A stretch of 63,825 nt of DNA, filler included, from Platydemus manokwari (lineage: Eukaryota): assembly GCA_037951405.1 (NCBI GenBank). It is 6 parts of 6 records of this genome, joined end to end, with 100 filler letters (N's around TTAATTAATTAA, not from the genome) between each part and the next. Parts side by side here need not be neighbours in the genome. Positions count along the whole stretch, not along the records: positions 44,768 to 54,425 come from JBBMOY011221320.1; 5 more parts are not named here. One strand, written 5' to 3'. This document shows positions 44,521-55,295 of this stretch, piece after piece (within the stretch, counting starts at the first letter, position 1; every line of letters begins with the position of its first letter). The position numbers and the translations under genes are program-made. The notes beneath the pieces are model-generated. The model did not search any database. It worked only from the letters and a program-made list of their open reading frames with translations, and had not been told where the DNA came from.

Positions 44521-47046
44521 AAAGAAAACAGGTGATGATATTAATTATAATTTATAATTTTTAGAATTATAAATAATTGTTGAACCATTGAATTACTGTT
44601 ATGAGTATTATTTGATAAATTTATATATGAAATCTAAGTGAATTGCGAAAATAAAATAGCCTCAAATNNNNNNNNNNNNNNNNNNNNNNNNNNNNNNNNN
44701 NNNNNNNNNNNTTAATTAATTAANNNNNNNNNNNNNNNNNNNNNNNNNNNNNNNNNNNNNNNNNNNNGTCCCTGTACGTCCTACTACGTTGTCCTGCATT
44801 TTGCCAAGTGACCCCGGAAATACAAGCGAGCCGACCCGTGGTATTTCTGGAGGACGTGGACTTGACAGGGATAGAGTAGGGATGGTGTTAGATGAAAATG
44901 TGACCCCCGTCTACCGTTTTATAATGAGACTGAGTGTTTTACGGTGGACCGTCACGGCAGGAAGGACACAGAGACGGTCTAAGGCAGGGTCACGGAGCTG
45001 GCCTGGTAGATGAGTAGGGATTAGTTGGCGTGAGGTGACTAGAAGAAAACATGTATCAAATACTTTAATTACCGGATTAAGCTAATCCGCGAATCAATTG
45101 CACGCACGAGATAGTTAATTATTCCGGGAAATAAACTCTGAAAATGCTCGTGTCGATCATTACGCAATCCTGACAATAAAATCTCAAAACCATTTTGAAG
45201 GTATTCACGATTGTTTATAATAATAATAGGCAAATCGGAACTTGATTTCACAATAAATTTAATGAAATAATCACTCTAATATCCCAAAATTCAAAATCTA
45301 TCAATTCCATTAAGATTCTTTGAAACAATTTCAGGTCCATTGAAAATATATGCAAAAATGAACATTCTTTTTGGAAAATAGAAAAAGTGATTTATTTCTA
45401 AATTTATTTAAATTATTTATTTTTATTTCAGGTAGGCAATCTGTGATAACTAGAATCTTTTAACTCACAAAAAAATATCAATTTTATCTGCCTCTATAAC
45501 TTTATCTTTACTTATTAAATATAGATTCTGTTTGTTTTCAATTGCCTAAATTTTAAGTTTGTTTTTATTACTTTTCATAACAAAAAATTCTTTCTAAAAT
45601 CTCTAAATTTAGCTAATAAAAACTCGATTTTTAAAGCAAACTCGAAAAAATGATCGATAAACCTTTGAATATTGACAATAATATAAGCGATGCATGCATC
45701 AAACTCTTCCCTCCCAACGACCATGTGAGTTAGATATCTGTTAGGTTATTAAACAACAATTTAGATCTGAAAATTTGTATTAACTAAATATCACACTCAG
45801 TCGCAATAATAAAAATATAATTATTTCTGATATTATTAACAAAATGATACTATTAACAATAATTTAGATGTAAAAACGCAATTAATAAAATTTTTAATAA
45901 TTTATTTTAAAACATTTATTTCTTTAACAATTTGTTTAAGTAAGGTAATTTATTTATATTTCAACATTTTTATTTTGTTATTTTTTCGTTAGAGAATTTT
46001 GTAAAAAATTTTTAATCAATTGTGATTATATATTTTTTAAGGGTTCCAAAACTTCATCATCCAGCGCTTCTCGAAATATAAGATAATTTTTTGTTATTAT
46101 TTTTTTTGTTAAATGATGCTGTTTAGCACAAACCCCACAACCGAGCGACATACGCATCCCCATGCATGCGTCGTCTCTGAAAGCCAGTACGGAACTAATC
46201 GACAACTCGAATCCTCACAAGCTACACACAACTGCCTTCACACTAAAAATCCTTGGAGCCATCAATGTAATAACGGTCAATATATTTTGTTACTACTATT
46301 TTTATCCTTTTTAATGTAATTTTATATAATTTGCTATTTGTTTAATTTTATTTTGAAAATTAATTAAATATTGTAAATAATAATAATAACAATAAAATCA
46401 ACAATATTATCTAATTATAACAATAATTTAATTTATAATACTAATATTAACAATAATATTAACGATAAACGGTAATTTTATATGCTTATTTCTTATGTTT
46501 ATCTTTATATTAGTTACTAAAAGCGCAATCATAAACACAGGGAACCTATTAATCCACAATATCAAAATACATCACATACATAAAACCAATAATAAAAATA
46601 TTAAATAGTTAAATATTAAGATTAACATTGATTAAAAATGATATTCACCTAAAAAATTGAAATAATAAATTTTCAGAATAATAGAAATTTTTCAGGAGCA
46701 ACTGACAACTCTTGAGAAATCATTAGAAAAAAACCATAAGTTATCAAAATAATTTAAATAATAGTGAAAACAATAAGTAATGACAAGAAACAGATCTAAT
46801 AACAAGAAAATATCGAAATAGTCTTTCATGATTTAGTTAAAACAAGTCTATCAAGAGTTATATCAACCAAATATACCTTTTGAGCATGTAATTAATATTG
46901 AATCCTGTACATGGAAACAAAAGCCTAAAGAGCATAAAACTTAAAATCCATTTTGTACAAGCTAATAATCGAATTAGAATGACGATTCGAAATTATATTA
47001 ATAATATTCTTGAATATCGGTTTTATACAGAAGGTTATTATTTTAA

Positions 47047-48045
47047 GTGTTAAAACAAACCAATGACAATAGCGACACGGAAAAAGAAACTCGAGGAAGA
47101 TTTGGACATTTTACATTTGTTATCAAATTAGAAAATTATGAACATGAAAAAGATATTTACCAATCAACATGGACACGCAATTGTGTTTATTTGTATGCTC
47201 AAGCAGAAAATTCCGACAAAGGTTATGTCCATTTACAATGCTTTGCACAAATGAGATACTCTATGAATTACATCAAAGCTCGAGAGTTGCTCAATGTAAC
47301 ATTCGTCAAACCGGTTCCAGGCACTGAAAAAATGCAGACTTTAGCTTATTGCCAAAAAGAAGAAAGTCGAATAAAAACATTTGAGCCCATCGTTATCGGA
47401 GTTTTAGGTAAGAAAGCTTGTTATACTTTATCTAAAATGGATTCTGCTTCTAATTGTTATGAAAAAGCTTTGTTAGCTCCAAATAAAGAATCAGCTATGC
47501 ATTGTATTCGAAGAGCTGATCCTCGCAATTATTTATTAAAACGTAAATGCATTGATGAATCTTTAAATTCTATACATGGAGAATGTACACAACACTTGTG
47601 GACAAAATTTGAGCATGAAAAAATATTTTTACATGACAATAAATGCCATGTCTTTATTGGACCATCTGGCATTGGCAAGACAAACTTTGCATTAGCACAT
47701 TTTAAATTTCCAGTGCTTGTTACAAATATTCAAACTTTTGGTAGAATTATAAACAATCCAGAGAAATGCGATGGAGTAGTTATTGACGATCTTTCTTTTA
47801 AGCATTGGGAATCAACACAATTAATTCATTTATGCGATTTATACCAAGAATGTGCAATCAATATTAAATATGGCACAGCCTACATACCACGATACATGCC
47901 ACGCATTATATGTACAAATGATTGGGATGGCATCATACCAAACATGTTACCGGAGCATTACAAAGCTGTTATGAGACGATGTGAATTTCATAGATTCATA
48001 GGACCATTGTTTAAGGTTTCATTTTTAAATATGAATTCATTTTAA
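47047..48045 (+). CDS. rep: CRESS-DNA/geminivirus-type rolling-circle Rep (HUH endonuclease + SF3 helicase), endogenous
   Basis: RCR motif I FTFVI, motif II VHLQC, motif III YCQKEE. Walker A GPSGIGKT, Walker B VVIDD, B' INIKYG, motif C IICTN, Arg finger AVMRR. Uninterrupted 332 codons starting at GTG, right after TTTTAAG. Confidence 0.92.
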   Translation: MLKQTNDNSDTEKETRGRFGHFTFVIKLENYEHEKDIYQSTWTRNCVYLYAQAENSDKGYVHLQCFAQMRYSMNYIKARELLNVTFVKPVPGTEKMQTLAYCQKEESRIKTFEPIVIGVLGKKACYTLSKMDSASNCYEKALLAPNKESAMHCIRRADPRNYLLKRKCIDESLNSIHGECTQHLWTKFEHEKIFLHDNKCHVFIGPSGIGKTNFALAHFKFPVLVTNIQTFGRIINNPEKCDGVVIDDLSFKHWESTQLIHLCDLYQECAINIKYGTAYIPRYMPRIICTNDWDGIIPNMLPEHYKAVMRRCEFHRFIGPLFKVSFLNMNSF

Positions 48046-49322
48046 CAAAAAAACGCTCATTTCATACCGGTACACCTGGTATATATATATTGATAAGACC
48101 AATTGAAATCTACAGTTGATAAATTTGAACAAATCATTTCATAGAAAATGAAAATCATTGGAATTCTGGATACTTGAAATATCTATCTATTTTTTATCAG
48201 TCGACAGTAAGCATTTCTTTATTGAAATAATTTTTAATAATCATTTTTAAAAATAATCTATAAATTTTTATTAATATTTAGAAATTAAATATTCAGTAAA
48301 TATTATGAAAACAGTTTTGTACGAATTTGTACTTGGCAAATTACGATTTTATCAATTTTATGTACAAAGTAGAAGTATCCACTGCTACCTTTGAGATAAC
48401 TATTTATTCAATAAACATTGGATTTTATGATCACTTTGACAAATTAAGATTTCAAAAACTTAACTTACCAGGGTAGCCATTGAAGTCACTTCGATGATTA
48501 CCTCAGATATCATACCTTCTCAATTTGTGGTCACTAGTCTCTTTCAAAAACTTCTACTCGTCTTCCACTCTCGAGAGAACTCGGTAAAACAATGTCAACT
48601 GCGGTAAAAACAAAGTCATTAAAAGATAAAAGCCTCGGCTCATCTTTAGGGTTTTGGATTGTGGGTGTTGAGTGAACTGCAACTTTCGGTACACTTAATC
48701 TTGTTGCATTCCTTTACCAAATAAGAACTCCAAATATAAGAAATTCGCTTTGATAATCGACGAGATACACTTGGTATTCATTAGATTGATGGGCTTGATC
48801 GAAACCAATAATCAACACTGAATCGTTTGTACATGTACAGTTCGATTGTTCAATTTGTTCGCACCTTTTTCATTAAATTCCTGAGTTCGGGATATATTTC
48901 TTCGTCCATCAGACATTTAACATGAACCAGAAAGATTATCGACTTTCCACTAGTTAACAATTTCTACTCTCATTTTGGAGTGACCTATCTTTCTCTTCCA
49001 GCGTAAATATAACTATCAATTAAATATGCATGAAATCTAGCACGAATACGACGATTAACCAAACAAGGGGACCAAATGAAAAGAAAGAGAAGATGTGAAA
49101 CAAACATGTGATACAGACAGAAGCCGGTTGCTAATGCACTTTAATGTGCAAAAATTGTATTTTAAAAACAAATAACACTCTGCAAGGCACGCCCCAAATT
49201 TAGAGAATAGAATTCACTAATAGAGAGATACCTTAGGATACCATTTCTCCAACATCGACCTAATGGCGAAGGCATAGCATTTTTTTAATATACTGCTACA
49301 ACTGATTTATTTGATATTAGAA

Positions 49323-49948
49323 CTGGAGTTCTCGACCCCGGGGTTGCGACCCCAAATGGAGTCAACAAGCATTTCTAGGGGTCGCTGAATTATTGTATGT
49401 GTATAAACCATTACATGTGAGAAATCGTGTTTTATGATGCTGTTAAATAAATAATTTGTGATGCTGTTTAAACTACTTCTGTTCACAATTACCTTGACTA
49501 CTATTTTATAGGTAATGTTATTATCTGATAATCTTTTTATTATAAGTAATTCATTACTTGTTGTAAATCAGTGAAATGTAAATCAAATGATAACTAAATA
49601 TCATTTTATTATATATAATATATACTATATATCCTTTCACTCATTTCAAAAAACCCATTGAATGACTTCAACGATCAGAAAGCTCCCACGTGCAGATGAA
49701 TTTATCAACTCTGGATTTACTTACATTATTTCGTAAGATGATTTGTAATAAACATTATCCACAACACTTCAAATTGATAAGTTTGTGAAAAGGAAACAGT
49801 ATCAACATTCTGATTAACTTGTTGTAAAATGGTTTTATTAAATATGGTGAGTTATGACTAATTATTAGTAATATTGATTTTTTTTGGAGTCACCAAGATC
49901 TTAAAAATTAGAAAATTGGTTGTCATAGAAAAAAGTTGAGAACCGCTG
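49323..49948 (+). mobile_element. hAT (Charlie/Buster-type) MITE or deletion derivative
   Basis: Ends CTGGAGTTCTCGAC ... GTTGAGAACCGCTG, subterminal GGGGTTGCGACCCC, 8-bp flanks TATTAGAA/TATCAGAG (6 of 8 match). Internal RKLPRADEFINSGFTY resembles a Buster N-terminus. Confidence 0.75.
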
Positions 49949-52900
49949 TATCAGAGCATGATTTTAGGAATTTCGATGAACAGATAACCATAAGACGTTT
50001 GGAGCCCTTTCTTTCTAAAGAGATATTTCGATAGACCCCTCAAAGAGATTTCACTACCGCTATTATAATGGGAGGGATATAAAGTTTCCTCCGCATATGT
50101 TTGACGACACCTCCAATTTTTCCCCGTCAAATCTTGTTCATCGTATAGATTTATATGGAAAGTTAACCACTCAATAGCATTTTCTAGAGACACTGGTTTT
50201 CTAAATTTCATCCACGTTAATTTTTTTGAAGCTAGAGCTTCAACTTGTATTATAATGAACTATGTTCACAATGGTATTAAACACAAACACATTCTGTTTA
50301 AAAATATTTTTTTAACTATGCTTTGACTATAAAAGCTATAAATGAGAACTAAGTCTCGTCGCTTCTGCTGAATTACCAGCTCAGAATATCCTTTATGTCA
50401 TAAAAACAACTACACTAGTTTCACTATACCATACTACCTTATTAACTTACAGCAACACTGCCTGCAAGATAAAAAAATTTTACCTTGTATTCCAAATCTT
50501 GTTCCAATGGCCAATTACTTTATTTAACCAGAGCATTATTTCAGAAATCAAAACATATAAACGCTCAAAAATTTTCCAACGTGCGAAAATTGTTTTATTT
50601 ATTATTATCCATCGTGTTTCAAATGAATATTTAAAAGAAATTGTATTGTCTGACAAACAAAAAGATATTTATCCACAAATCAGTAATATTATTATTAAAA
50701 TTATGTCGGATTATGAAACCGACAACCTAGCCAACAAATAATCTGATTCCAGGACTACTCCGAGCATTCTTTCACTTGTGATTATTCATTTTTTGTTTTA
50801 ATTGGAGTCTCATAAATGGTAAGTCAATTTGTATTTTACTAATTTATTATTAATAGTTTATATTGCAAGTCTAAGATTAAAATGAGTGCAGACTGACAGC
50901 TAGCTTTGTTTAGAAAGGTATTGAATCTTAATAAACAAAAATTGTTGCTAATATTGAATATGTAACCAGTAACGATGAACCCGCTTTCTCCAAATAAGTT
51001 TTACATTAGTTTAGTTGGCTCAGGTACCAATTAGAACAATCATATATGGTTTTGTAGGAAGATTGCAATATTAATTTTGAGGTCACTGATTCATCAGTGA
51101 TTCACCATAAATTAGGTCAAACCGTTGAATCAGGCTCTTTTTAACAAATACCAAAATAACAGTCTATATTTTGAATTTGAACAAGATTGGGCAGATTATT
51201 TCCTGGTTACTAAATTGTTTGAAAGGAATTTCATTTTATCCTTGACCAAGTTAAGAATAAGTGGCCTATCAATTAATGGATCCAGGAAAATATATTTCTA
51301 CATATGAATTATTTTCATAAAAGTGAACGTAGTCGTCCTTATTTTTCCCAACGATTACTCAAACAAATCTAACATGGAAAGAATAGGAGGAATGTAGATT
51401 GTCATCAACTATTTTGACAGCGGTTTCTTATTTGCTTTGTTATTTTTATACTAATGAGATTTTTGGGAAGAAATTCAGCATATTCGCAAGCCGAGGGGTC
51501 TCAGTAAAGATGTTGAGATATTTGTGTGTTTCCTCACTCAGAGTTGGAATGATATAGGACATTGCAAATTATAAATACTTTTGTTTCCAAAAAGTCATAA
51601 AAACATGTCTGAGAGCGAATCAATAATCCCGGCATTGGGTTTGATGATGGCTAAGAAACTCCAGTAAGGGTTTCCAATGTTGATAGTAGTAAAAACCATC
51701 CAAAAAAAGAAAGAAGTTAATTGTTAATACTTACTACGCGGTGCCTATCATCATTGTAAAAGCCAATAAAGATGATATTTCTTAGGTCTGAGCTTGATTT
51801 AAAGTAAGAACTTAAGAATCATTTATAGTGGGGCACTGTAGTTTTATAGATCGCTCCGGTCAAGGACGTCTTTGGTTTTTAGAAAAGATAAATCATAAAA
51901 GATCATGACAATATATATTATGTTATGATTTACAACAGTTATGTATCAAAATTTCAGGTTTTTTTTCTTAATAAACGATAGTTTTTCAGAAGAACAACAC
52001 CACCACAAAAGGTTTCGCAAATTAGTCATAAAATATTTAATCATTTGGACAACTTGATTAAATTCGTGTAGCAATCAAAAGTTTGGTCTGAAATTTTAAT
52101 CATTCATATGAAATGCGTGGTTTTTGATTTCAACCAATAATAGATTTTGTGGATTATTTTATCATTAGTATCAATAATTCGTTTGTTAACACTTTATTCA
52201 GGTTGGTCTAAGCAGTTAGCTATTCATTTAGATCTAAGTAGTCTTCATAATTTCTCTTAAGTTGAATTGTTAGGATCCCAATAGTATTAATGGTATAACA
52301 TTATTGTTGTTTTCTGTTAATCAATTATTCCAACCTTAACCTTTTTACTTTTGATTTGATAGCATTTATTTCATTTTATTTTCATTTGGTAATTGAAATA
52401 AAGTTTAAAAATAAACATTTTGTTACGATCCGAAATTTAATTCGTTTACTACCAAAGAAAGTATATCAACAATGTGGAAACTATTTCTTTGGAATTAACA
52501 ACCAATACTGTTAATAAAGAGAAAAACATAAAACAAGTACGTAAGCATTACCTGCAGTTAGTGAGGAGTCAGATAGACTACATAATGTTGAAGTTATCGA
52601 ATTTTTCTGATCGGCCAAACGTAGTTGGTATATTTTTAACGGAATTGACTACTAGTTATTGGTGAAATTGAAAAGTAATGATGAAATACATGTATGCAAA
52701 TTAGAAATTTTCAATCCAACATGATCTGAAAATAATTGAAATGTGTTCAAATAATGTAACAATTGAATTGTAATAATTTATCATATACACGATTTCAATT
52801 TATAATATCTTTCAAAAAATCTTAAGCGCGAGTTTTATATTATCAAAATAAGTACACGCACATCTAACATTGAACCATTTAGATTTTATTTTGATATAAA

Positions 52901-55295
52901 ATTGATCATTACGACGTTATTCCATACGTTTAATATCAATTTTTGCAAGTTAATGATCTTATTAACAAACTAAGATATAAATATAAATATATCAGGCCCG
53001 AAAATTGAAGGAATATCAATTATTATGGAAAAACTTTCTATACGACGAAATATTTCACAGCTTAACAACATATAAAAAAATTTGATTCAAATTATAATTG
53101 ATAACAAAGTTACATTAAATTCCAAACAAAATATCGATGAAAATATTATAAATTGTTCTAATTATACCATCAACTATAAATTTTAAAAACATGACATTCG
53201 AGAGAATTACTGAAATAAATCTTGAGATTATACATACCTTCACATTTTTTCCCTTATTCTTTGATGAGTCAATCAAAAAATAACTACTCCTGAAATTTTA
53301 TTTTATCACTTTTCAGAGTTTCATATCACACATTTTATTTGAAAAAACTAAATTTGATCACATTAAAGTATGGGAAAATATTGACAAAGAAATCACATGT
53401 TATTTTAGTGTTGTCATATGAGACATTTAAACAAAAGAATATTTTTTTATAACTTCTCTTAAATAATTTTATGATCGTAAATTTCCAAGTGCTTCACCAA
53501 AATTCCATCTGGAAATTTAAAATGAATCTTAAATTAACTGGATCTCAAAACTCTTTTAATAATATTTCATTTTATTTTTTTATGTGTTCCGTTTAACCTG
53601 ACTCTAATACCTTTGTTTTAAATTTTTATTTGATTTCATTAATTTTAATAAAATAAATCAAAATTGATGGTTTATTTACCGTTACAAATTATATAAAATA
53701 TGAACTATATTATTTTTTGCATAGCCAATAATTTCATTTACACTTCATGTGTGCTAGTTCAGTTGTGTTATTGTTGTGTTATTATACGCTTCCTCAGTTA
53801 TTATTGAAATCTTTGGATATGCTATCTTCGGACTTTACTCTAATGACAACAGTTTCTGCTTTTAGCATCTTTCTTCAAAAATAAGGTTTGTTCTTTGTGG
53901 TTTTTTATAATGGAAGCTGATTTATTTATTTTTAACACTATTTATATAATCTCAGGTTTAGGTTCACTTATCATTTATCGTTTTACAATATCTTTTGATG
54001 TCGGGTGATTATTATTTATCCTCAGTGGTTAACGATTTTTCAATTAGGTACTAAATATTATTGCTACAATTCATTTAATATTTACATAAAATAGAATTGT
54101 TGAATATAGAAATACCTTCGAATGATAATAAAAAATATTTTTTCAAATCCAGGCTCTCCCAAATATAGAAACCATGAATGTAAATATAAATAGAATTTAT
54201 AAATTCTAAAAATAGACATAATAATTTAATAAGCATATAAATAGATTGATAAGTCGTAGGATGCTAAAAATAACATTAAAAAAAATACAATAATAACCAA
54301 AGATCGGGATAGCTTAAAAAGGGAAATATGATAGTATTTAAGAAAAGCATGACACATAACAACGTTTAGAGATAATACTCCTTAATAATCCCATAATTAT
54401 TTCAGTTAAAACAGCTGATTACTGTNNNNNNNNNNNNNNNNNNNNNNNNNNNNNNNNNNNNNNNNNNNNTTAATTAATTAANNNNNNNNNNNNNNNNNNN
54501 NNNNNNNNNNNNNNNNNNNNNNNNNATTAATTAATTAAAGATTGTCGTCAAACATTGTAATATCGAACTCATACCAGGAGACTGTATATTATCATATTAT
54601 AGTAATTTTATTGAACATTGTCTCTGTAACGTATAATATCAATTATTTGAATCGTCAGCCATTGTGTTATCATAAATTATTAGCAAGTTTTTATAACCGC
54701 TTCATTATTTTTAGGCCCAGAGCAACTCAGTTTCCTATGTGTCCAATTATTAATTTAAAATCAAATTATTTTCCAGCAGCTTGGTCATCATACCAGTTGC
54801 TGAAGCCCCTAGAACCAGTATAAAAATCAATCGCCAACACTCAAAAAAACCCTTTCATTTAATAAATATACAAAGTGAATTTATTTTTTGAGATAACTGA
54901 TCGGTGTCGATGTGTTGATCTGATTATTCAATTTTGATTGATTACATTGGTTTTGCAATTTTTTCGCGATGATCTTGGTTTGTCGTGGCTATTGTACCTT
55001 GAGTGGGTTTTGAATGTTGCGCGTTTTTAATGTATGAGCAGTGATGCTTATATACCGCCACTTTCTTGTCTATCACTTCAACTATCAATATATTTTCTTT
55101 GAATTTGCAGCGTAATTATTTACTTACTATTTTTTTGTTAATAAGTTAGAATTGTTTATTCATCTTAACATATTCCTGTCTTCATTTTTTCTATCTTTTT
55201 TCTCTGGTTAGTTTTGTCATTTTAACATTCCTTTCTTAATTAATTTTTATATAATTTTCATTATCGTTATGTAATCCTTATTAATAATAATATTT

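What the first reader, a model, noticed from the sequence alone, without database searches (positions are those of the whole stretch)
47047..48045. Intact endogenous CRESS-type Rep with no capsid, no start ATG and splice-like boundaries
Seen: all HUH and SF3 catalytic motifs are intact over 332 codons while the surrounding TE relics are full of stops. There is an in-frame stop at 47044, so no ATG precedes motif I. The ORF opens at an acceptor-like TTTTAAG and has a donor-like AAG|GTTTC near 48015. I found no Cap ORF and no nonanucleotide stem-loop nearby. The ADPRNYLL and NIKYG segments resemble geminivirus/genomovirus Reps. Inference: a spliced exon of a domesticated gene or of a capsid-less mobile element, or else a recent endogenous viral element.
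Basis: partly seen in the sequence, partly recalled or inferred. Interest (0 to 1): 0.8.

Follow-up and report, generated by a model that had tools for sequence, protein, structure and literature searches.

The report
Capsid-less endogenous CRESS-virus Rep gene
The replication gene of a small circular DNA virus sits inside AT-rich non-coding DNA of an unidentified eukaryote, with its reading frame whole but no start codon, capsid gene or replication origin; such viral fossils are common, and this is a new and rather isolated example.

Summary
The 332-codon open frame at 47047-48045 (+) is real and far beyond chance (P about 6e-13; the next longest frame in the 9.7-kb piece has 131 codons). It encodes a complete CRESS-type Rep: HUH motifs I-III, then Walker A, Walker B, motif C and an arginine finger. 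A profile of it and its six relatives hits solved Rep structures (7lar, E 7e-18). Five of the seven proteins match Pfam Viral_Rep, the circovirus/nanovirus type, and none matches a geminivirus-type family. The nearest proteins in 5.8 billion are only 41-56% identical.

No capsid gene, origin hairpin, terminal repeat or second Rep fragment lies in the piece. The splice-like strings occur at chance frequency, and homology runs almost to the stop codon, so no donor is needed. The frame has no internal stop and no frameshift, but it lacks an initiator codon before motif I.

Best reading: a Rep-only endogenous viral element, young or constrained, and not a spliced exon. Rep-only insertions are the known norm (302 Rep against 3 capsid sequences in one survey). 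It is a new member of a known kind, of modest interest. Looking up the relatives' genome-sized contigs was referred.

The parts
47047..48045 (+). Rep gene of a CRESS-DNA virus, endogenous copy: 332-codon open frame plus stop. State: no internal stop, no frameshift against ten relatives, one defect (no initiator codon before motif I).
47098..47400 (+). HUH endonuclease domain (residues 18-118), with motif I at 47110-47121, motif II (HxQ) at 47230-47238 and motif III (YxxK) at 47347-47358
   Evidence: Alignment A1. Profile hits to solved Rep nuclease domains 6h8o, 2hwt, 5xor, 2hw0 and 6wdz, E 1e-11 to 3e-14. Pfam Viral_Rep at 17.2 bits, below its cutoff of 26. Motif positions. The structure model is not confident here.
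47401..47616 (+). Linker or oligomerisation region (residues 119-190), poorly conserved (8-16% identity to relatives)
   Evidence: (helices, pLDDT 54-77)
47617..48012 (+). SF3 helicase domain (residues 191-322), with Walker A at 47659-47682, Walker B at 47776-47790, motif C at 47908-47919 and the arginine finger at 47974-47979
   Evidence: Invariant columns in A1. pLDDT 83-94. Fold matches to SF3 helicases including 7lar and 8xms. 36-42% identity to full-length relatives and 54% to P0002.
44768..47046 (.). Upstream flank: AT-rich DNA (GC 0.18-0.28, rising to 0.43 at the left edge) with no recognisable gene, RNA or repeat end; taken for host DNA
48046..54425 (.). Downstream flank: AT-rich DNA with no recognisable gene. 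It includes a GC bump at 48268-49517 that holds no identifiable capsid remnant.

Best explanation
This is an endogenous viral element: the Rep gene alone of a CRESS-DNA virus (phylum Cressdnaviricota), of the Viral_Rep type and from an unclassified, sparsely sampled lineage, integrated into AT-rich non-coding DNA of a eukaryote. In the donor virus, Rep starts rolling-circle replication. The HUH domain nicks the origin loop and binds the DNA through the motif III tyrosine, and the SF3 helicase hexamer unwinds the DNA (established knowledge of the family; the motifs are shown here, activity is not). Here the gene has no origin, no capsid gene and no initiator codon. It therefore cannot propagate, and by ordinary initiation it cannot yield a full-length Rep. 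Its frame is whole either because the insertion is young (neutral divergence below about 2-5%) or because it is under constraint. I take 'young, with no proven function' as the more likely. The boundaries are an ordinary frame opening and a natural stop, not splice sites. Integration by illegitimate or Rep-mediated joining during nuclear replication is inferred, not shown.
For: Rep identity: the motifs and invariant columns are intact. The profile hits full-length Rep 7lar at E 7e-18 and Rep nuclease domains at 1e-11 to 3e-14. The helicase half has an SF3 fold. The best BFVD matches are CRESS Reps. Pfam Viral_Rep matches 5 of 7 family members. Embedded, not free: 2.3 kb and 6.4 kb of continuous flanks hold no N, no gene, no capsid family, no origin hairpin and no second Rep fragment. 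Not a spliced exon: the strings are at chance, and the whole Rep sits in one frame with homology ending about 10 codons before the stop. Not decayed: 26 of 28 columns invariant in the relatives are kept, the branch is no longer than those of P0001 or P0002, and the nuclease domain is as conserved as it is among the relatives. Age bound: 182 of 2988 possible substitutions make a stop, so P(intact) falls to 0.05 at K = 0.016-0.05. Rep-only insertions are the norm: 302 Rep against 3 capsid sequences in 35 eukaryotes, and the same paper notes that intact frames may mean recent insertion (PMC3198968). Not prokaryotic: no match in plasmids, phages or 185,579 prokaryotic genomes.
Against: The host was not identified and no reads are available, so integration rests on the assembly alone. 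A frame this long with every catalytic residue kept would equally fit purifying selection. The AT-biased composition cannot tell amelioration from ancestry, because the nearest relatives share it. The missing initiator could be made good by an upstream exon that I cannot see. A very decayed capsid remnant in the GC bump at 48268-49517 is not excluded; capsids diverge fast, and Pfam was the only test. The window's own protein falls short of the Pfam Viral_Rep cutoff (17.2 against 26 bits), and the nuclease half of the model is not confident.
Confidence: 0.6

Rival explanations
1. A co-opted (domesticated) host gene. The Rep frame is kept by selection and expressed, perhaps through splicing to an upstream exon that supplies the start codon. 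It would act, for example, as an interfering factor against related viruses or as a host DNA-processing enzyme.
For: The 332-codon frame is intact in DNA where open runs average 12 codons. All catalytic motifs and 26 of 28 family-invariant columns are kept, with no excess change on this branch. Expressed and conserved Rep-like genes are reported in other eukaryotes (PMC3198968).
Against: There is no initiator codon. The splice-like strings are at chance. No tool predicts an intron and no relative shares one here. No coding signal was found in 20 flank frames. No near-identical protein exists among 5.8 billion, so no ortholog or paralog is on record. Intactness is equally explained by youth.
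Confidence: 0.15
2. Part of a larger capsid-less element: a Rep-bearing transposon, or an integrated virus-like element of the kind described in planarians, whose other parts lie in or beyond the piece.
For: BFVD rank 9 is the Rep of a planarian virus-like element (27% identity, E 1e-16). An integrated relative in a planarian genome and geminivirus-like transposons in fungi are mentioned in PMC3198968. The piece's AT-rich, gene-poor make-up would suit such a host, but that is a lead only.
Against: No inverted or direct terminal repeats rise above chance; the best pair bracketing the ORF is matched or beaten in 14 of 40 shuffles. There is no second helicase or other protein family in the flanks and no further copy in 9.7 kb. 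Unclassified CRESS virus Reps are closer than the planarian one.
Confidence: 0.1
3. Assembly artefact: a free viral genome from a contaminant or an infection, joined by mistake to host DNA.
For: The relatives sit on contigs of 2.3-2.8 kb, the size of free CRESS genomes. The ORF's dinucleotide signature is somewhat further from the flanks (0.172) than the flanks are from one another (0.117). No read data are at hand.
Against: Only about 1 kb is viral. A free genome would also bring a capsid gene and an origin hairpin, and neither is found on either side. The piece has no N. Third-position GC of 0.24 matches the flanks. The signature difference is what coding against non-coding DNA would give.
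Confidence: 0.07
4. A Rep of prokaryotic plasmid or phage origin (pCRESS-like), or bacterial contamination.
For: Rep-like genes of some protists were once ascribed to plasmids (PMC7493932). Weak P-loop hits to IstB-type ATPases appeared.
Against: No tblastn match in 72,556 plasmids or 50,697 phage records. No relative in 185,579 prokaryotic species genomes, though that scan used a single peptide pattern. The flanks are not gene-dense under any genetic code tried. The IstB hits cover only the Walker A region and lie far below their cutoffs.
Confidence: 0.02

Closest known systems
Endogenous Rep-like sequences of circular ssDNA viruses in eukaryotic genomes (Liu et al. 2011, PMC3198968; Katzourakis and Gifford 2010, PMC2987831; Kinsella et al. 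2020, PMC7493932)
   Same: A Rep gene alone, without capsid or origin, embedded in host DNA. Some copies have intact frames. Rep outnumbers capsid 302 to 3.
   Different: This copy is only 41-56% identical to the nearest proteins on record. Its host is unknown. Neither expression nor orthologs could be examined.
Rep of Circoviridae and Nanoviridae type (Pfam Viral_Rep PF02407; solved structures 7lar, 5xor, 2hw0, 6wdz, 6h8o, 2hwt)
   Same: The two-domain layout (HUH nuclease then SF3 helicase), the motif set and the size of about 300 aa. The family profile hits these structures at E 7e-18 to 1e-11, and 5 of 7 family members match PF02407.
   Different: The window's own protein scores 17.2 bits, below the cutoff of 26. 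Identity to BFVD Reps is at most 29%. No tree with named references was built, so no family is assigned.
[quoted passage not shown]
   Same: A Rep of similar size, 27% identity, Foldseek E 1e-16. It comes from an animal with, to my knowledge, an AT-rich genome.
   Different: It is not the closest relative. From my memory of Rebrikov et al. 2002, which the library does not hold, that element is larger and carries long inverted repeats and a second helicase; neither is seen here.
Geminiviridae and Genomoviridae Rep
   Same: The general HUH plus SF3 plan.
   Different: No member matches a geminivirus-type Pfam family. The solved geminivirus-type nuclease 7kii scores E 2e-6 against 1e-11 to 1e-14 for the circovirus and nanovirus types. 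BFVD begomovirus and genomovirus Reps come at ranks 15-17 with 13-16% identity.
Rep genes captured without capsid by other genomes (draupnirvirus Rep in avian poxviruses, PMC10193959)
   Same: Transfer of Rep alone into a foreign genome, with retention of the frame.
   Different: There the capture is shared by a lineage and said to be under purifying selection (paper's abstract and term counts). Here nothing is known beyond one copy.

Membership tests
CRESS-DNA virus Rep (Cressdnaviricota) | HUH endonuclease motifs I, II (HxQ) and III (YxxK) in order | tested here: met
   Present once each at residues 22-25, 62-64 and 101-104, aligned with the relatives' motifs. The profile hits solved Rep nucleases.
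CRESS-DNA virus Rep (Cressdnaviricota) | SF3 helicase with Walker A, Walker B, motif C and arginine finger | tested here: met
   These columns are invariant in A1. The model is confident here, with fold matches to SF3 helicases including circovirus Rep.
CRESS-DNA virus Rep (Cressdnaviricota) | Nuclease domain fold | tested here: inconclusive
   pLDDT is below 50 over residues 1-135 because only four relatives cover the domain.
Pfam Viral_Rep PF02407 (circovirus/nanovirus type) | Score at or above the gathering cutoff of 26 bits | tested here: not met
   The window's protein scores 17.2 bits, E 0.006. Relatives P0003-P0005 carry the domain and 5 of 7 members match at E <= 0.01, the best at 2.9e-12. 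It therefore works like this family and groups with members, but is itself below the cutoff.
Geminiviridae/Genomoviridae Rep | Match to a geminivirus-type Rep family or structure better than to other Rep types | tested here: not met
   No such Pfam family matches any member. 7kii is the weakest of the Rep nuclease hits. These Reps rank low with low identity in BFVD.
Autonomous CRESS-DNA virus genome | Capsid gene beside Rep | tested here: not met
   No capsid family in 20 flank frames, and no flank frame longer than 131 codons. A very decayed remnant is not excluded.
Autonomous CRESS-DNA virus genome | Origin stem-loop with a conserved nonanucleotide in the loop | tested here: not met
   The core occurs 3 times against 3.9 expected, none in a hairpin loop. 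Hairpin counts equal those of shuffles.
Autonomous CRESS-DNA virus genome | Small circular molecule | not testable with these tools
   Only an assembled linear piece is at hand. Viral sequence covers about 1 kb of 9.7 kb.
Endogenous viral element | Viral gene continuous with non-viral host DNA on both sides | tested here: met
   There are 2.3 kb and 6.4 kb of flanks with no N and no viral homology. Third-position GC matches the flanks. This rests on the assembly; the host is not identified.
Endogenous viral element | Germline presence (reads spanning the junctions, inheritance) | not testable with these tools
   No reads and no other genomes of the source organism are available. The window's protein is not on record.
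Co-opted host gene | Complete gene model with a start codon, or a supported splice to one | tested here: not met
   No in-frame ATG before motif I. The splice-like strings are at chance. No intron is predicted or shared.
Co-opted host gene | Orthologs under purifying selection; expression | not testable with these tools
   No relative is above 56% identity and there are no transcript data.
Rep-bearing transposon (terminal-repeat type or rolling-circle type) | Defined ends (terminal repeats) and multiple copies | tested here: not met
   Bracketing inverted repeats are at chance level (14 of 40 shuffles as good). There are no direct repeats and only a single copy in the piece. Copy number in the genome is not testable.

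The most novel reading that the evidence does not exclude
The Rep frame is a host gene in the making or already co-opted. It would be transcribed and joined to an upstream exon that supplies the start codon, kept intact by selection, and used by the host against related circular DNA viruses or for a DNA-nicking or unwinding task of its own. It would come from a CRESS lineage that is barely sampled.
Probability: 0.12. Interest if true: 0.6.

Novelty: new member of a known kind. Interest (0 to 1): 0.3.

Why it matters
Endogenous Rep genes are among the few direct clues to which hosts CRESS-DNA viruses infect, since most of these viruses are known only from metagenomes. This copy belongs to a lineage with fewer than a dozen relatives found by the word search among 5.8 billion proteins. 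Once the source organism is named, it would tie that lineage to a host. If the copy proved to be expressed and conserved, it would add a case of Rep co-option. As it stands, it is an ordinary kind of viral fossil in unusually good condition.

Tried and rejected
1. Variant genetic codes (TGA-only, TAA+TAG-only and others): the flanks do not become coding. With TGA as the only stop the Rep frame grows only from 332 to 359 codons, and reading together shows no ATG in the added upstream stretch. Rejected.
2. Terminal inverted repeats: the pairs I1 and I13 bracket the ORF but are AT-rich chance matches. Rejected.
3. Origin search by nonanucleotide core and by hairpin scan: at chance level.
4. Capsid search with Pfam on 20 flank frames, each piece on its own and none read through a stop: nothing found.
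5. Further Rep fragments or tandem copies: none.
6. Plasmid, phage and prokaryote sources: none.
7. Rfam and tRNA scans of the piece: nothing.
8. NCBIfam and PHROGs: only P-loop noise.
10. Nuclease half searched alone: blank, which speaks only for proteins of 69-219 aa.
11. Dinucleotide signature: the ORF is somewhat apart from the flanks, but coding against non-coding confounds this.
12. The paper on the planarian element (PMC116598) is not held.

Full report
**Scope.** I worked only on the finding's piece, window 44768-54425. It is 9658 bases with no N and a GC content of about 0.29.

**The observation.** The open frame is at exactly the stated place: 47047-48042, with its stop ending at 48045, 332 codons.
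- It is far longer than any other frame in the piece; the next are 131 and 102 codons.
- The other five frames of the same stretch carry 15-28 stops each.
- At this composition a stop is expected every 12 codons, so 332 open codons have a chance of about 6e-13.
- The frame is closed directly upstream, and its first in-frame ATG comes only after motif II.
- Counting defects only: no internal stop, no frameshift (ten relatives align in the single frame), and one defect, the missing initiator.

**What the protein is.** On its own the protein is a weak match.
- Pfam Viral_Rep gives 17.2 bits against a cutoff of 26.
- Solved Rep nuclease domains score E 0.3-0.6.
- NCBIfam and PHROGs show only P-loop noise.

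The word search found six relatives at 25-56% identity. None has a name, all come from Logan or ENA assemblies, and three carry PF02407. The alignment A1 shows all the Rep motifs in the window's protein:
- Motif I at residues 22-25, motif II (HxQ) at 62-64 and motif III (YxxK) at 101-104.
- Walker A at 205-212, Walker B at 244-248, motif C at 288-291 and a paired arginine at 310-311.
- The helicase motifs are invariant across all seven sequences.

A profile of A1 hits the full-length Rep helicase 7lar at E 7e-18 over both domains. It hits six Rep nuclease entries at 1e-11 to 3e-14, and the geminivirus-type 7kii only at 2e-6.

The AlphaFold model is confident for residues 136-324 and not for 1-135, where only four relatives give depth.
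- Its PDB matches are SF3 helicases, circovirus Rep among them.
- Its BFVD matches are unclassified CRESS Reps at 24-29% identity.
- A planarian virus-like element's Rep is at rank 9. Begomovirus and genomovirus Reps come only at ranks 15-17 with 13-16% identity.
- Scanned one by one, five of the seven proteins match Viral_Rep and none matches a geminivirus-type family.

So this is a CRESS-type Rep of the circovirus/nanovirus (Viral_Rep) kind, from an unclassified lineage. The second lies between Walker B and motif C and holds an invariant tyrosine.

**Domains searched apart,**.
- The helicase half finds only P0002 (54%) and a JGI fragment, P0010 (44%).
- The nuclease half finds nothing among proteins of 69-219 aa, which says nothing of longer ones.
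- No near-identical protein exists in the collection, and the window's own product is not on record.

**The boundaries.**
- The acceptor-like string occurs 7 times in the piece against 6.3 expected, once inside the frame. The donor-like string occurs 4 times against 2.9 expected.
- Homology to the closest relatives runs to about 10 codons before the stop. Two other relatives end within a dozen residues of the same point, so the stop is a natural end.
- The frame holds 21 residues before motif I, and the relatives hold about 5 to 33. The whole Rep therefore lies within the frame, and an upstream exon could add only a start codon.
- No tool predicts an intron and the relatives share none here.

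**The surroundings.**
- No Rfam family and no tRNA.
- Twenty flank frames on both strands, each searched on its own, match no Pfam family.
- The nonanucleotide core occurs at chance frequency, each copy more than 1.8 kb away. Hairpins are no more frequent than in shuffles, and none holds such a core in a GC-stemmed loop.
- The inverted repeats that bracket the frame are AT-rich chance matches; 14 of 40 shuffles do as well.
- No second Rep fragment lies in the piece.
- Variant genetic codes neither make the flanks coding nor supply a start.
- No match exists in plasmids, phages or prokaryotic genomes.

**Age or constraint.**
- Of 2988 possible substitutions in the frame, 182 would make a stop. 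Under neutrality the chance of staying intact falls to 0.05 at a divergence of 0.016-0.05, depending on the share of indels.
- The protein keeps 26 of 28 columns that its relatives hold invariant, which is within the relatives' own range. It shows no excess of private changes against P0001 or P0002.
- Its nuclease domain is as close to the relatives (24-26%) as they are to one another.
- Third-position GC is 0.24, like the flanks. But the nearest relatives share the AT-driven amino-acid make-up, so this is a lineage trait and no proof of long residence.

The data therefore fit either a young insertion or a constrained one. The missing initiator and the lack of any gene context tip me toward young and without proven function.

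**Comparison with what is known.** Rep-like insertions of circular ssDNA viruses are widespread in plants, fungi, animals and protists.
- One survey counted 302 Rep-like and 3 capsid-like sequences in 35 species. Its authors note that intact frames may mean recent insertion rather than function (PMC3198968).
- Integration is thought to be Rep-mediated during nuclear replication (PMC7493932).
- 'Rep with no capsid' is thus the rule, not an oddity.

**Left out and referred.** The closest relatives sit on contigs of 2291-2824 nt, the size of whole CRESS genomes. I could not tell whether these are viruses of animals. I therefore did not look up or pattern-scan their DNA, and I made no scans of the viral or metagenome collections. 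The loss is small: at 31-41% Rep identity their capsids would hardly detect a decayed remnant here. The large representative search was not used, for the reason given under 'tried and rejected'.

- My first notebook entry repeats the finding's coordinate of the stop that bounds the frame upstream.
- In my thinking I located a candidate cause for the lost start.
- In my thinking I once began recalling a stretch of a known virus's Rep from memory.

I stopped each time.

**Verdict.** This is a real, well-preserved, Rep-only endogenous CRESS element of a poorly sampled lineage. The splice reading and the geminivirus likeness are not supported. It is a new member of a known kind, with interest 0.3.

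Noticed in passing
window 44768-45050: The left edge of the piece is much richer in GC (0.43 and above) than the rest (0.18-0.36). It holds the only GC-stemmed hairpin of the piece (44946-44980). No Pfam or Rfam match; its nature is unknown.
   Followed up: partly
window 48268-49517: GC rises to 0.32-0.36 just downstream of the Rep. On the minus strand, 48537-48869 is a 111-codon frame with a single stop. Its pieces match no Pfam family. A capsid remnant is neither shown nor excluded.
   Followed up: partly
window 49300-49400 and 49880-49960: Short GC-rich strings recall, from memory only, a dispersed short repeat seen in animal genomes. This was not tested with any tool, and it is the only hint that the host might be an animal.
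   Followed up: no
window 46376-46462 and 48225-48286: An AAT microsatellite lies upstream of the Rep, and AT-rich tandem repeats (periods 13 and 21) lie just downstream. The downstream repeats supply the right arms of the chance inverted repeats.
   Followed up: yes
protein P0001 (contig of 2762 nt, not fetched): The closest full-size relative begins only at motif III although its contig is genome-sized. Its Rep may be split into exons or cut short.
   Followed up: no
BFVD hit Q910M2: [quoted passage not shown] PMC3198968 mentions an integrated relative in a planarian genome. A planarian source for the window is a lead, not a finding.
   Followed up: partly
window 44768-54425, flanks: CpG observed/expected in the 1-kb flank segments is 0.65-1.37, so there is no strong CpG depletion. 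This suggests a host with little cytosine methylation.
   Followed up: no
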